Positions 33,566-36,807 of a stretch of 64,000 nt of DNA are shown here, in pieces. Position 1 is the first letter of the stretch, and each line of letters begins with the position of its first letter. The notes below the pieces were generated by a model. That model was not told the DNA's origin, did no database searches, and saw only the letters and a list, made by a program, of their open reading frames with translations. The stretch lies in the NCBI RefSeq assembly GCF_964213995.1, contig NW_027590210.1, positions 620,001-684,000 on the forward strand, given 5' to 3'. The translations under genes and the position numbers were made by a program. The stretch comes from Mustelus asterias. Taxonomy: Eukaryota.

Positions 33566-36500
33566 AGGAGAACTGGGTTAATTGTTAGATTACACAGTGA
33601 TATGTTACAGGGCAGTAATCCAGGGGAACTGGATTAATTGTTAGATTACACAGTGATATGTTACAGAGCAGTAATCCAGGGGAACTGGATTAATTGTTAG
33701 ATTACACAGTGATATGTTACAGAGCAGTAATCCAGGGGAACTGGATTAATTGTTGGATTACACAGTGATATGTTACAGAGCAGTAATCCAGGGGAACTGG
33801 ATTAATTGTTAGATTACACAGTGATATGTCACAGAGCAGTAATCCAGGGGAACTGGATTAATTGTTAGATTACACAGTGATATGTTACAGAGCAGTAATC
33901 CAGGGGAACTGGATTAATTGTTGGATTACACAGTGATATGTTACAGAGCAGTAATCCAGGGGAACTGGATTAATTGTTAGATAACACAGTGATATGTTAC
34001 AGAGCAGTAATCCAGGGGAACTGGATTAATTGTTGGATTACACAGTGATATGTTACAGAGCAGTAATCCAGGGGAACTGGATTAATTGTTGGATTACACA
34101 GTGATATGTTACAGAGCAGTAATCCAGGAGAACTGGATTAATTATTAGATTACACAGTGATATGTCACAGAGCAGTAATCCAGGGGAACTGGATTAATTA
34201 TTAGATTACACAGTGATATGTTACAGAGCAGTAATCCAGGGGAACTGGATTAATTGTGAGATTACACAGTGATATGTCACAGAGCAGTAATCCAGGGGAA
34301 CTGGATTAATTGTTGGATTACACAGTGATATGTTACAGAGCAGTAATCCAGGGGAACTGGATTAGTTGTGAGATTACACAGTGATATGTCACAGAGCAGT
34401 AATCCAGGAGAACTGGATTAATTGTTAGATTACACAGTGATATGTTACAGAGCAGGAATCCAGGGGAACTGGATTAATTGTTAGATTACACAGTGATATG
34501 TTACAGAGCAGTAATCCAGGGGAACTGGATTAATTGTTAGATTACACAGTGATATGTTACAGAGCAGTAATCCAGGGGAACTGGATTAATTGTTGGATTA
34601 CACAGTGATATGTTACAGAGCAGTAATCCAGGGGAACTGGATTAATTGTTAGATTACACAGTGATATGTTACAGAGCAGTAATCCAGGGGAACTGGATTA
34701 ATTGTTAGATTACACAGTGATATGTTACAGAGCAGGAATCCAGGGGAACTGGATTAATTGTTGGATTACACAGTGATATGTTACAGAGCAGTAATCCAGG
34801 AGAACTGGATTAATTGTTAGATTACACAGTGATATGTCACAGAGCAGTAATCCAGGGGAACTGGATTAATTGTTAGATTACACAGTGATATGTTACAGAG
34901 CAGTAATCCAGGAGAACTGGATTAATTGTTAGATTACACAGTGATATGTCACAGAGCAGTAATCCAGGAGAACTGGATTAAATGTTGGATTACACAGTGA
35001 TATGTCACAGAGCAGTAATCCAGGGGAACTGGATTAATTATTAGATTACACAGTGATATGTCACAGAGCAGTAATCCAGGGGAACTGGATTAATTATTAG
35101 ATTACACAGTGATATGTTACAGAGCAGTAATCCAGGAGAACTGGATTAATTATTAGATTACACAGTGATATGTTACAGAGCAGTAATCCAGGGGAACTGG
35201 ATTAATTGTTAGATTACACAGTGATATGTTACAGAGCAGTAATCCAGGGGAACTGGATTAATTGTTAGATTACACAGTGATATGTTACAGAGCAGTAATC
35301 CAGGGGAACTGGATTAATTATTAGATTACACAGTGATATGTTACAGAGCAGTAATCCAGGGGAACTGGATTAATTGTTAGATTACACAGTGATATGTTAC
35401 AGAGCAGTAATCCAGGGGAACTGGATTAATTGTGAGATTACACAGTGATATGTCACAGAGCAGTAATCCAGGGGAACTGGATTAATTGTTGGATTACACA
35501 GTGATATGTTACAGAGCAGGAATCCAGGGGAACTGGATTAATTGTTGGATTACACAGTGATATGTTACAGAGCAGTAATCCAGGGGAACTGGATTAATTG
35601 TTGGATTACACAGTGATATGTTACAGAGCAGTAATCCAGGGGAACTGGGTTAATTGTTAGATTACACAGTGATATGTCACAGAGCAGTAATCCAGGGGAA
35701 CTGGATTAATTGTTAGATTACACAGTGATATGTTACAGAGCAGTAATCCAGGGGAACTGGATTAATTGTTAGATTACACAGTGATATGTTACAGAGCAGT
35801 AATCCAGGGGAACTGGATTAATTGTTAGATTACACAGTGATATGTCACAGAGCAGTAATCCAGGGGAACTGGGTTAATTGTTAGATTACACAGTGATATG
35901 TTACAGAGCAGTAATCCAGGGGAACTGGATTAATTGTTAGATTACACAGTGATATGTCACAGAGCAGTAATCCAGGGGAACTGGGTTAATTGTTAGATTA
36001 CACAGTGATATGTTACAGAGCAGTAATCCAGGGGAACTGGATTAATTGTTAGATTACACAGTGATATGTTACAGAGCAGTAATCCAGGGGAACTGGATTA
36101 ATTGTTAGATTACACAGTGATATGTTACAGAGCAGTAATCCAGGGGAACTGGATTAATTGTTAGATTACACAGTGATATGTTACAGAGCAGTAATCCAGG
36201 AGAACTGGATTAATTGTTAGATTACACAGTGATATGTTACAGAGCAGTAATCCAGGGGAACTGGATTAATTGTTGGATTACACAGTGATATGTTACAGAG
36301 CAGTAATCCAGGGGAACTGGATTAATTGTTAGATTACACAGTGATATGTTACAGAGCAGTAATCCAGGGGAACTGGATTAATTGTTAGATTACACAGTGA
36401 TATGTTACAGAGCAGTAATCCAGGAGAACTGGATTAATTGTTAGATTACACAGTGATATGTTACAGAGCAGTAATCCAGGAGAACTGGATTAATTGTTGG

Positions 36501-36807
36501 ATTACACAGTGATATATTACAGAGCAGTAATCCAGGGGAACTGGATTAATTGTTAGATTACACAGTGATATGTTACAGAGCAGTAATCCAGGGGAACTGG
36601 ATTAATTGTTAGATTACACAGTGATATGTCACAGAGCAGTAATCCAGGGGAACTGGATTAATTGTTAGATTACACAGTGATATGTCACAGAGCAGTAATC
36701 CAGGGGAACTGGATTAATTGTTAGATTACACAGTGATATGTTACAGAGCAGTAATCCAGGGGAACTGGAGTAATTGTTAGATTACACAGTGATATGTCAC
36801 AGAGCAG
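33566..36807 (+). repeat. Tandem array of 58 x 56-bp units, each containing a 12-RSS-like signal
   Basis: Unit GGATTAATTGTTAGATTA-CACAGTG-ATATGTTACAGA-GCAGTAATC-CAGGGGAACT. First heptamer at 33593, last at 36785; the difference of 3192 equals 57 x 56. Confidence 0.95.

What the first reader, a model, noticed from the sequence alone, without database searches (positions are those of the whole stretch)
33566..36807. A 58-copy tandem array of 12-RSS-like signals next to 23-RSS TCR V segments
Seen: each 56-bp unit holds a consensus heptamer CACAGTG, exactly 12 nt (ATATGTTACAGA), then GCAGTAATC, which matches ACAAAAACC at 5 of 9 positions and keeps the two A's at positions 6-7. Signal sequence makes up half of the unit. 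Unit variants I read fall in the spacer, nonamer, loop and flank, not in the heptamer, and the period is unbroken. The array lies 1.3 kb from the nearest V remnant and within 15 kb of all six 23-type RSSs. Established: RAG1/2 joins a 12-RSS to a 23-RSS. Inference: this may be a RAG landing pad, decoy or rearrangement hotspot. The array signals have the same orientation as the + strand V RSSs, so a first join would be an inversion. That inversion would flip the more proximal units into deletional orientation and could allow serial secondary rearrangement. I know of no described RSS satellite in an antigen-receptor locus, but could not search the literature.
Basis: partly seen in the sequence, partly recalled or inferred. 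Interest (0 to 1): 0.92.

Follow-up and report, generated by a model that had tools for sequence, protein, structure and literature searches.

The report
RSS-like minisatellite inside TCR V cluster
Fifty-eight near-identical 56-letter repeats, each carrying a look-alike of the cutting signal used to assemble T-cell-receptor genes, sit among receptor V genes; the array is real and may have grown out of a V gene's own signal, but nothing yet shows that the cutting enzyme uses it.

Summary
TRF finds a 56-bp x 58.1-copy array at 33560-36811 (97% matches, no indels). All 58 full units carry CACAGTG, then 12 nt, then GCAGTAATC. Six 23-spacer RSSs at V-type segments lie within 14.3 kb.

The functional reading is untested. 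The invariant heptamer is not evidence of constraint (P=0.12; P=0.34). A 5/9 nonamer is background: 7 of 17 other perfect heptamers in the window do as well. Neither array edge lies at a heptamer border. By published assays the unit is still a credible cryptic RSS (PMC9723617, PMC12711392).

The sequence after the heptamer resembles the 23-RSS spacer of the V segment at 27748 (best anchored p=0.0006, about 0.007 after 12 tests). The unit may therefore descend from a V signal, and the "12-RSS" reading would be secondary.

Read depth indicates roughly 10^3 units genome-wide and about 4-14 copies of the left flank. The scan's unchecked notes list some ten other arrays of about 56-bp period beside TCR V genes on other pieces of this genome.

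A satellite with working cryptic signals is already described, the mouse gamma-satellite (PMC2193808). Best reading: a passive, locus-associated minisatellite. Interest is moderate.

The parts
33560..36811 (+). 56-bp minisatellite array: 58 full units plus a 4-nt stub
   Evidence: TRF; register and variants; 57 core matches, all inside the array
33649..33655 (+). Consensus heptamer of a representative unit (unit 2, 33616-33671); same column in all 58 units
   Evidence: heptamer columns 33-39 invariant in 58 of 58 units
33656..33667 (+). 12-nt stretch read as the spacer. It starts AT. In 15 of 58 units a T>C variant creates a second heptamer-like CACAGAG.
   Evidence: column 46 varies in 15 units; PMC9723617 Table 1
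33668..33676 (+). Nonamer-like 9-mer, 5 of 9 to consensus. Its last five bases are one arm of the unit's hairpin.
   Evidence: read directly; background; fold
33616..33636 (+). 8-bp-stem, 5-nt-loop inverted repeat present in every unit
   Evidence: one hairpin per unit in the centroid structure; z=-5.26 for three units folded as DNA
33430..33559 (+). Left flank between the palindrome and the array. It is low-copy in the genome (about 4-14 times unique depth) and shows no significant likeness to the unit or to V 3' ends.
   Evidence: depth bins 33380-33586
33335..33428 (.). 94-bp near-perfect palindrome (45-nt arms, 93% complementary, 4-nt loop), starting 6 bp after the break in the high-copy repeat
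   Evidence: sub-threshold miRNA-hairpin hits only
32964..33329 (+). Fragment of a very high-copy interspersed repeat with an ORF piece. It is LINE-like by recall only and is broken at 33329.
   Evidence: summed depth is 10^4-10^5 times the unique level, and loose ends at 32964 and 33312-33329 show other copies running on. Pfam 0 families. Atlas best 0.82.
36812..37120 (+). Right flank: decayed ORF pieces that I recall as reverse-transcriptase-like. Unconfirmed.
   Evidence: translation; Pfam 0 families for 3 of 3 pieces
27748..27786 (+). 23-RSS of the V segment at 27384-27747, the only V signal here with a perfect heptamer. Its spacer resembles the unit's post-heptamer sequence.
25558..25596 (+). 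23-RSS (consensus nonamer 9 of 9) of the V at 25241-25557
28500..28538 (+). 23-RSS of the V at 28182-28499
32273..32311 (+). 23-RSS of the V remnant nearest the array
30053..30091 (-). 23-RSS of the - strand V at 30092-30477
19310..19349 (-). 24-spacer RSS of the - strand V at 19350-19723

Best explanation
This is a young, homogenised 56-bp minisatellite. It belongs to a low-abundance family of roughly 10^3 units genome-wide.

Its arrays sit in blocks that have been copied several times. As far as the scan's own unchecked notes go, they sit beside TCR V genes.

The unit was probably seeded by tandem duplication of a V segment's recombination signal: heptamer, spacer and decayed nonamer. Small insertions then stretched the original 23-nt spacer to about 28 nt. 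On this reading the perfect heptamer is inherited from a real signal. It stays uniform through array turnover (unequal exchange or slippage), not through selection.

Reading heptamer, 12 nt and a weak nonamer is then a secondary coincidence inside the old spacer.

By sequence each unit qualifies as a cryptic RSS that RAG could nick if the chromatin were open. The array is most likely a passive by-product of a duplication-prone locus and not a device.

Shown: the array, its uniformity, the V signals, the depth ratios and the spacer similarity.
Inferred: the RSS ancestry, spread by block duplication, and the absence of a selected role.
For: - Array and uniformity.
- No excess conservation of the heptamer: P=0.116 and P=0.34.
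- Local alignment of the post-heptamer sequence of the unit against the V27748 23-RSS scores 22 (consensus unit) and 24 (T46C variant). At most 1 of 1000 shuffles reaches this.
- Against 20,000 random window segments, the local p is 0.0045 and 0.00185. Anchored at the heptamer, p is 0.0053 and 0.0006.
- 29 of 33 aligned pairs are identical, heptamer included, with two gaps.
- V27748 is also the only one of the six V signals with the same perfect heptamer.
- Two further V spacers give anchored p of 0.025 and 0.036.
- Depth: in X2 the unique bins are 69-72, the left flank 490-789 and the array bins 7,421-33,171. In X1 they are about 7.6, 29-110 and 635-7,037. Only 9 units were laid, so this window's 58 units alone would give about 6x.
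- A second coded organism (X24, raw reads) holds the satellite at 25-212 against 0-5 in unique bins. A third (X8) almost lacks it (0-57).
- Neither array end is at a heptamer border.
- The scan's notes list other arrays of about 56-bp period beside TCR V genes, and 61-bp arrays of complete 23-RSSs behind V genes (unchecked).
Against: - The RSS-ancestry signal rests mainly on one V signal. After correction for 12 tests the best p is about 0.007, and for the consensus unit about 0.06.
- The shared core is a short CA/GA-rich word.
- The part of the unit before the heptamer and the left flank show no likeness to V coding ends (12 tests, smallest p=0.017).
- Contig depth is not a copy number, as the tool itself warns.
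- I could not see the other arrays, so the link to TCR V clusters rests on notes that were selected for that context.
- The heptamer plus AT spacer start is functionally optimal and the 9-mer fits the RWR pattern, so a real RAG interaction is not excluded.
Confidence: 0.55

Rival explanations
1. An ordinary minisatellite of unrelated origin, for example from a mobile element or random sequence. Its likeness to a recombination signal would be pure chance, and its presence near V genes would reflect block duplication only.
For: - 0.35% of shuffled units carry a perfect heptamer, and 0.042% carry a heptamer plus a nonamer of 5/9 or better at 12 or 23 nt (n=200,000). The window alone holds dozens of tandem arrays, so such a family is expected somewhere in a genome.
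- 7 of 17 other perfect heptamers have an equally good nonamer.
- Five bases of the nonamer-like 9-mer are explained by the hairpin arm.
- High-copy repeat fragments flank the array.
Against: - The post-heptamer similarity to the V27748 signal is unexpected under pure chance.
- The family is low-copy, and every array the scan has noted lies beside TCR V genes (unchecked).
- No terminal inverted repeats or target duplications were seen around the array.
Confidence: 0.27
2. The units are used by RAG as 12-type partners of V or D 23-RSSs. The array would act as a hotspot, decoy or landing pad, in lymphocytes or in the germline, and would produce inversions or deletions in the V region.
For: - A perfect heptamer with the best-ranked spacer start (PMC9723617 Table 1).
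- The 9-mer has C at position 2 and purine-A/T-purine at positions 4-6, as in non-canonical functional nonamers (PMC12711392).
- A 12-nt spacing in 58 of 58 units.
- Six 23-RSSs within 14.3 kb, in mixed V orientation.
- Precedent: gamma-satellite cryptic signals recombine in plasmids and are cut in RAG-induced cells (PMC2193808).
Against: - No junction data.
- No excess conservation of the signal columns.
- The 9-mer lacks positions 8-9 of the non-canonical consensus and the A-tract of the canonical one.
- A consensus heptamer alone gives very low recombination, and the nonamer is the largest single determinant (PMC212687 passages).
- The array edges show no head-to-head heptamers or cuts at the heptamer border.
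- The top-listed joints show none between the V remnant signal and the array. That is weak evidence, because the tissue is unknown and 65 joints were not shown.
Confidence: 0.1
3. A repeat with an architectural or regulatory role in the V region, for example a binding platform for a DNA-binding protein or a chromatin boundary. It would be co-duplicated with V blocks, and its RSS likeness would be irrelevant.
For: - Recurrence beside V clusters in the scan's notes.
- A strong per-unit inverted repeat.
- Zinc-finger gene arrays interleaved with the V genes.
Against: - No motif or expression evidence of any kind.
- The satellite is nearly absent from one related coded organism (X8), so it is not a conserved locus component.
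Confidence: 0.05

Closest known systems
Cryptic recombination signals in mouse gamma-satellite (major satellite) DNA (Cowell et al. 2003, PMC2193808; passages read)
   Same: A tandem satellite whose repeat unit carries RSS-like signals. Two of three tested signals recombined in a plasmid assay. Ligation-mediated PCR found breaks at the satellite heptamers that rose 8- to 16-fold on RAG induction. The authors already raised the ideas of a site of remodelling or a safe sink for RAG breaks.
   Different: That satellite has a 234-bp unit, makes up about 6% of the genome, lies outside antigen-receptor loci, and its signals are 23-type. Here the unit is 56 bp, the family is small (roughly 10^3 units), the arrays lie among V genes, the reading is 12-type, and nothing has been assayed.
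Cryptic RSSs in general, including CA repeats and heptamers embedded in VH segments (as discussed in PMC2193808 and PMC12711392)
   Same: A CAC-led heptamer with a degenerate or absent nonamer that can support low-level RAG activity. The unit fits current sequence criteria for such sites.
   Different: Known examples are single sites or simple dinucleotide repeats. This is a complex 56-bp unit repeated 58 times in one orientation.
Physiological 12-RSS of D or J segments
   Same: A consensus heptamer, a 12-nt spacing and a 9-mer with A at positions 6-7.
   Different: No adjoining coding segment. The 9-mer is at background level against the consensus. The sequence after the heptamer aligns with a V-type 23-RSS spacer rather than with an independent 12-RSS.
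Repeat elements co-amplified with V genes in mammalian Igh
   Same: A non-coding repeat dispersed through a V region together with duplicated V blocks.
   Different: Those are single interspersed elements with documented factor binding. This is a tandem array with no such data.

Membership tests
Physiological 12-RSS | Heptamer starting CAC and close to consensus | tested here: met
   58 of 58 units carry the consensus heptamer
Physiological 12-RSS | Spacer of 12 +/- 1 nt between the heptamer and a nonamer | tested here: met
   Exactly 12 nt in all units, no indels
Physiological 12-RSS | Nonamer clearly closer to consensus than background | tested here: not met
   The match is 5 of 9. 6.1% of all window 9-mers reach this, and so do 7 of 17 other perfect heptamers at 12 or 23 nt. 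The six V signals here have 6-9 of 9.
Physiological 12-RSS | Directly abuts a V, D or J coding segment | tested here: not met
   The 28 nt before each heptamer are the rest of the repeat unit. No ORF of 70 aa or more overlaps the array. No [FW]GxG J motif (motif recalled) occurs in the three - strand frames of 33300-33620.
Physiological 12-RSS | RIC12 score at or above the physiological threshold (-40 in PMC2193808) | not testable with these tools
   The model parameters are not available here. Not computed.
Cryptic RSS | Heptamer and adjoining spacer favourable for RAG | tested here: met
   The heptamer plus an AT spacer start is listed at 1.144 in the top-quartile table of PMC9723617
Cryptic RSS | Nonamer position with features of functional non-canonical nonamers (purine-A/T-purine at positions 4-6) | tested here: inconclusive
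   Positions 4-7 fit the published NNNRWRWCT pattern but positions 8-9 do not (PMC12711392). The paper's table of top-scoring nonamers is a supplement, and supplements are closed.
Cryptic RSS | Documented RAG cleavage or joining at the site | not testable with these tools
   Needs lymphoid DNA or an assay. The single read-laying run showed no such joint among the 15 listed, with 65 more not shown.
Satellite / minisatellite DNA | Head-to-tail tandem copies with high identity | tested here: met
   58.1 copies, 97% matches, 0% indels
Satellite / minisatellite DNA | Family present at more than one place in the genome and in related genomes | tested here: met
   Array depth is 83-925 times the unique depth in X1 and X2. 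The left flank is about 4-14 times. The satellite is present in raw reads of a second coded organism.
Transposon-borne tandem repeat | Terminal inverted repeats or target-site duplication bounding the array and its flanks | tested here: not met
   The only inverted repeat in 32900-33640 is the local 94-bp palindrome. The right flank has no continuation of the broken left repeat within 3.5 kb. No transposon library was available.
   No J core motif in any - strand frame without assuming frameshifts. The left flank is no closer to V 3' regions than random segments.

The most novel reading that the evidence does not exclude
The satellite is a family of recombination-signal-derived arrays that RAG really uses. 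Units would pair with V or D 23-RSSs in thymocytes, or in germ cells, where sharks are reported to rearrange antigen-receptor genes (PMC2193156; search listing and abstract only). This would drive the inversions, deletions and block duplications that give these V clusters their mixed orientation. The locus would then carry its own RAG-operated remodelling sites.
Probability: 0.07. Interest if true: 0.85.

Novelty: new variant of a known kind. Interest (0 to 1): 0.42.

Why it matters
If RAG cuts these units, a V region would hold hundreds of same-oriented partner signals. That would bear on how RAG scanning tolerates or exploits cryptic signals inside its own loci, and on how V clusters are reshaped in evolution.

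If RAG does not cut them, the array is still a clean example of a recombination signal turning into satellite DNA. It is also a warning that a consensus heptamer with a 12-nt reading frame does not make a 12-RSS.

Either outcome can be reached with thymus versus non-lymphoid DNA from one animal.

Tried and rejected
1. The three - strand frames of 33300-33620 hold no J core motif unless frameshifts are assumed. Rejected as unsupported.

2. V remnant in the left flank. By eye I thought 33430-33592 looked like a V framework-3 end plus signal. Local alignment to the 3' regions of all six V segments, on both strands, gave 12 tests with a smallest p of 0.017 against 3,000 random window segments. Rejected.

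3. Decayed units in the flanks. The best local scores were 18-20 on the left and 17-18 on the right, against a shuffle 95% level of 22. Not above chance.

4. Transposon structure. No terminal repeats or target duplication were found. The broken high-copy repeat on the left does not resume on the right.

5. Naming the flanking repeats. Pfam gave 0 families for 4 of 4 pieces and for the 155-aa ORF. The Atlas best score was 0.82, a weak lead. The LINE and reverse-transcriptase labels are therefore recall only.

6. Rfam. Nothing in the array. There are only sub-threshold miRNA-hairpin hits on the palindrome (47.3 bits against a gathering score of 95) and one on a repeat at 31807-32000.

7. The bacterial promoter and terminator scan is irrelevant to this eukaryotic sequence and I ignore it.

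8. I did not compute a RIC score because the model is not available. I did not scan metagenome or viral collections for the unit.

9. By eye I compared the two 28-nt halves of the unit (10 of 28 identical) and looked for an insulator-type motif from memory. Neither is a test, and neither suggested anything.

10. An empirical count of heptamers in the other tandem arrays of the window was not done (see below).
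Full report
**What is there**

Tandem Repeats Finder reports one array at 33560-36811 with period 56, 58.1 copies, 97% matches and no indels. 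Cut in register, it gives 58 full units and a 4-nt stub. A 47-nt core of the unit occurs 57 times at up to 3 mismatches, always inside the array, with none expected by chance.

Each unit reads as follows:
- an 8-bp-stem hairpin;
- 12 nt;
- the consensus heptamer;
- 12 nt beginning AT;
- a 9-mer that matches the consensus nonamer at 5 of 9 positions and runs into the hairpin arm of the next unit.

Fourteen of the 56 columns vary, and none of them is in the heptamer.

**The surroundings**

A pattern scan found six signals with spacers of 23 or 24 nt, at 19349(-), 25558(+), 27748(+), 28500(+), 30091(-) and 32273(+). Each ends a V-type ORF.

Five of the five ORFs tested hit Pfam V-set. The sixth is a remnant paralogous to the V at 28182-28547.

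The best single-domain matches in the PDB for the V at 30031-30477 are TCR alpha chains. The V at 25241 is closest to antibody heavy-chain V domains. "TCR V" is therefore well founded for some of the six and not for all.

Zinc-finger genes lie in the same window.

**Is the signal likeness more than chance?**

Partly.

- A perfect heptamer on either strand appears in 0.35% of shuffled units. A heptamer plus a nonamer of 5/9 or better at 12 or 23 nt appears in 0.042% (000 shuffles).
- The window alone has dozens of tandem arrays, so a family like this is expected somewhere in a large genome.
- The nonamer adds little. 6.1% of all 9-mers in the window reach 5/9. Of the 17 other perfect heptamers in the window, 3 have such a 9-mer at 12 nt and 4 at 23 nt. 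Only one of those 7 is a V signal.
- The invariance of the heptamer is what chance gives: P=0.116 that 14 variable columns miss 7 given columns, and P=0.34 for an invariant run of 12 or more.

Published functional data point the other way.

- In a massively parallel assay, the consensus heptamer followed by an AT spacer start is in the top class. Spacer start alone changes use of that heptamer more than 50-fold (PMC9723617, section with Table 1 read).
- A nonamer screen found a second class of functional nonamers with consensus NNNRWRWCT (PMC12711392, abstract and two results sections read). The unit's 9-mer fits positions 4-7 and has the canonical C at position 2, but does not fit positions 8-9.
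- A consensus heptamer alone gives very low activity, and the nonamer is the largest single determinant (PMC212687, passages read).

So the unit is a credible cryptic signal, not a demonstrated one. I could not compute a RIC score.

**Where the unit may come from**

I compared the sequence after the heptamer with the six V signals. The signal of the V at 27748 is the only V signal with the same perfect heptamer, and it stood out.

- Local alignment scores were 22 (consensus unit) and 24 (the T>C variant found in 15 of 58 units). At most 1 of 1000 shuffles reached these.
- Against 20,000 random segments of the window, p was 0.0045 and 0.00185.
- With the alignment anchored at the heptamer, p was 0.0053 and 0.0006.
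- With the heptamer included, 29 of 33 aligned pairs are identical, with two gaps.
- Two other V spacers gave anchored p of 0.025 and 0.036. Across all six V signals and both unit forms, the weakest anchored p was 0.67.
- After correction for 12 tests, the best value is about 0.007 and the consensus-unit value about 0.06.

In that alignment the position equivalent to the V nonamer lies 28 nt after the unit heptamer and matches the consensus at 3 of 9 (hand count).

I read this as moderate evidence that the unit is a tandemly amplified, slightly lengthened V-type 23-RSS. The scan's own notes mention 61-bp arrays of complete 23-RSSs behind V genes on other pieces of this genome. That would fit, but I could not see them.

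**How widespread is it?**

One laying of reads was possible.

| Run (coded) | Unique bins | Left flank 33380-33586 | Array bins |
|---|---|---|---|
| X2 (organism A, contigs) | 69-72 | 490-789 | 7,421-33,171 |
| X1 (organism A, contigs) | about 7.6 | 29-110 | 635-7,037 |
| X24 (organism E, raw reads) | 0-5 | 5-18 | 25-212 |
| X8 (organism C, contigs) | 0-8 | 0-5 | 0-57 |

- This window's 58 units spread over the 9 laid units would give only about 6x. The family is therefore much larger than this array, roughly 10^3 units. The estimate is rough, because the tool warns that contig depth is not a copy number.
- The left flank exists in about 4-14 copies.
- In X8 the neighbouring high-copy repeat is as abundant as in the others, although the satellite is nearly absent.
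- The V-remnant side (32414-32827) is single-copy at 90% likeness. The repeated block therefore starts between about 32,900 and 33,380. This is also where the homology between the two V cassettes of this window ends (32907).

The scan's first-stage notes list further arrays whose length and copy number give a period near 56 bp. All are described as lying beside TCR V genes on other pieces of this genome:

| Note | Size given |
|---|---|
| s1-892316 | about 260 units |
| s1-890590 | 25 kb |
| s1-892479 | 60 units |
| s1-891837 | 51 units |
| s1-893695 | 38 units |
| s1-892810 | 28 units |
| s1-891393 | 10 units |
| s1-893369, s1-891669, s1-893886 | small arrays |

They are unchecked and were noted because of that context, so they are a lead, not a test.

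It was not met, but it was not excluded either.

**The edges**

On the left, a very high-copy repeat fragment (32964-33329) breaks at 33329, and other copies run on there (loose ends). A 94-bp palindrome follows, then about 130 bp of low-copy sequence, then the array.

On the right the array stops inside the 9-mer and meets decayed ORF pieces.

Neither end is at the heptamer border, and there are no head-to-head heptamers. This array therefore carries no visible scar of RAG cutting.

The flanks are not significantly like the unit, like V 3' ends or like a J segment.

**What is known**

Functional cryptic signals inside a satellite were described in 2003 (PMC2193808, passages read).
- Signals in the 234-bp mouse gamma-satellite repeat recombined in plasmids (2 of 3 tested).
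- They were cut in RAG-induced cells.
- The authors suggested remodelling or a harmless sink.

My searches for a tandem array of recombination signals, or an RSS-like satellite, inside an antigen-receptor locus found nothing relevant. Searches returned listings of 122, 2,131, 665 and 92 papers, of which I saw the top 15-20 each. A recent paper on the elasmobranch locus does not use the words satellite, tandem repeat, repetitive or cryptic (PMC12227049, term search).

**Verdict**

The best reading is a passive, young minisatellite that probably grew out of a V signal and spread with duplicated blocks. Its units are cryptic signals on paper.

It is a new variant of a known kind, a satellite that bears cryptic recombination signals. 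It is of moderate interest because one experiment on thymus DNA would decide it.

Noticed in passing
window 25241-25596: This V segment carries a perfect-nonamer 23-RSS. Its closest PDB matches are antibody heavy-chain V domains rather than TCR chains, although it sits in a cluster that includes a TCR-alpha-like V.
   Followed up: partly
window 27748-27770 and 30069-30091: Two V signals carry a short tandem duplication of the heptamer: a heptamer followed a few bases later by a second heptamer-like word. The signal at 27748 can also be read as a 13-spacer signal from the second heptamer.
   Followed up: partly
window 33335-33428: A 94-bp near-perfect palindrome (45-nt arms, 93% complementary) starts 6 bp after the break in a high-copy repeat. 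It gets only sub-threshold miRNA-precursor hits in Rfam.
   Followed up: partly
window 17489, 31460/31528, 48228/48296: Copies of an interspersed repeat each carry a perfect heptamer with a 5/9 nonamer at 12 or 23 nt. Dispersed repeats here supply cryptic signals of the same nominal quality as the array.
   Followed up: no
window 17235-17429: A 28-bp x 7 tandem array at 98% identity whose unit contains a palindromic 8-mer and a heptamer-like word.
   Followed up: no
window 550-3777 and 14544-15608: C2H2 zinc-finger gene arrays (84-bp periodicity, - strand) are interleaved with the V cluster. The 354-aa ORF has 11 zf-C2H2 stretches in Pfam.
   Followed up: partly
window 28336-29405 and 32109-32907: An old duplication of a V cassette (78-87% identity). 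Its homology ends at 32907, just before the high-copy repeat fragment and the array.
   Followed up: partly
window 41205-41904 and 42654-42984: C-rich 23-bp and 25-bp tandem arrays border the N runs at 40327-41204 and 41932-42493. I did not examine them further and left the gaps untouched.
   Followed up: no
window 31624-32028: A short interspersed element with at least nine other copies in the window (79-95% identity). It has a sub-threshold Rfam hit to a plant miRNA family, most likely a hairpin-forming mobile element.
   Followed up: no
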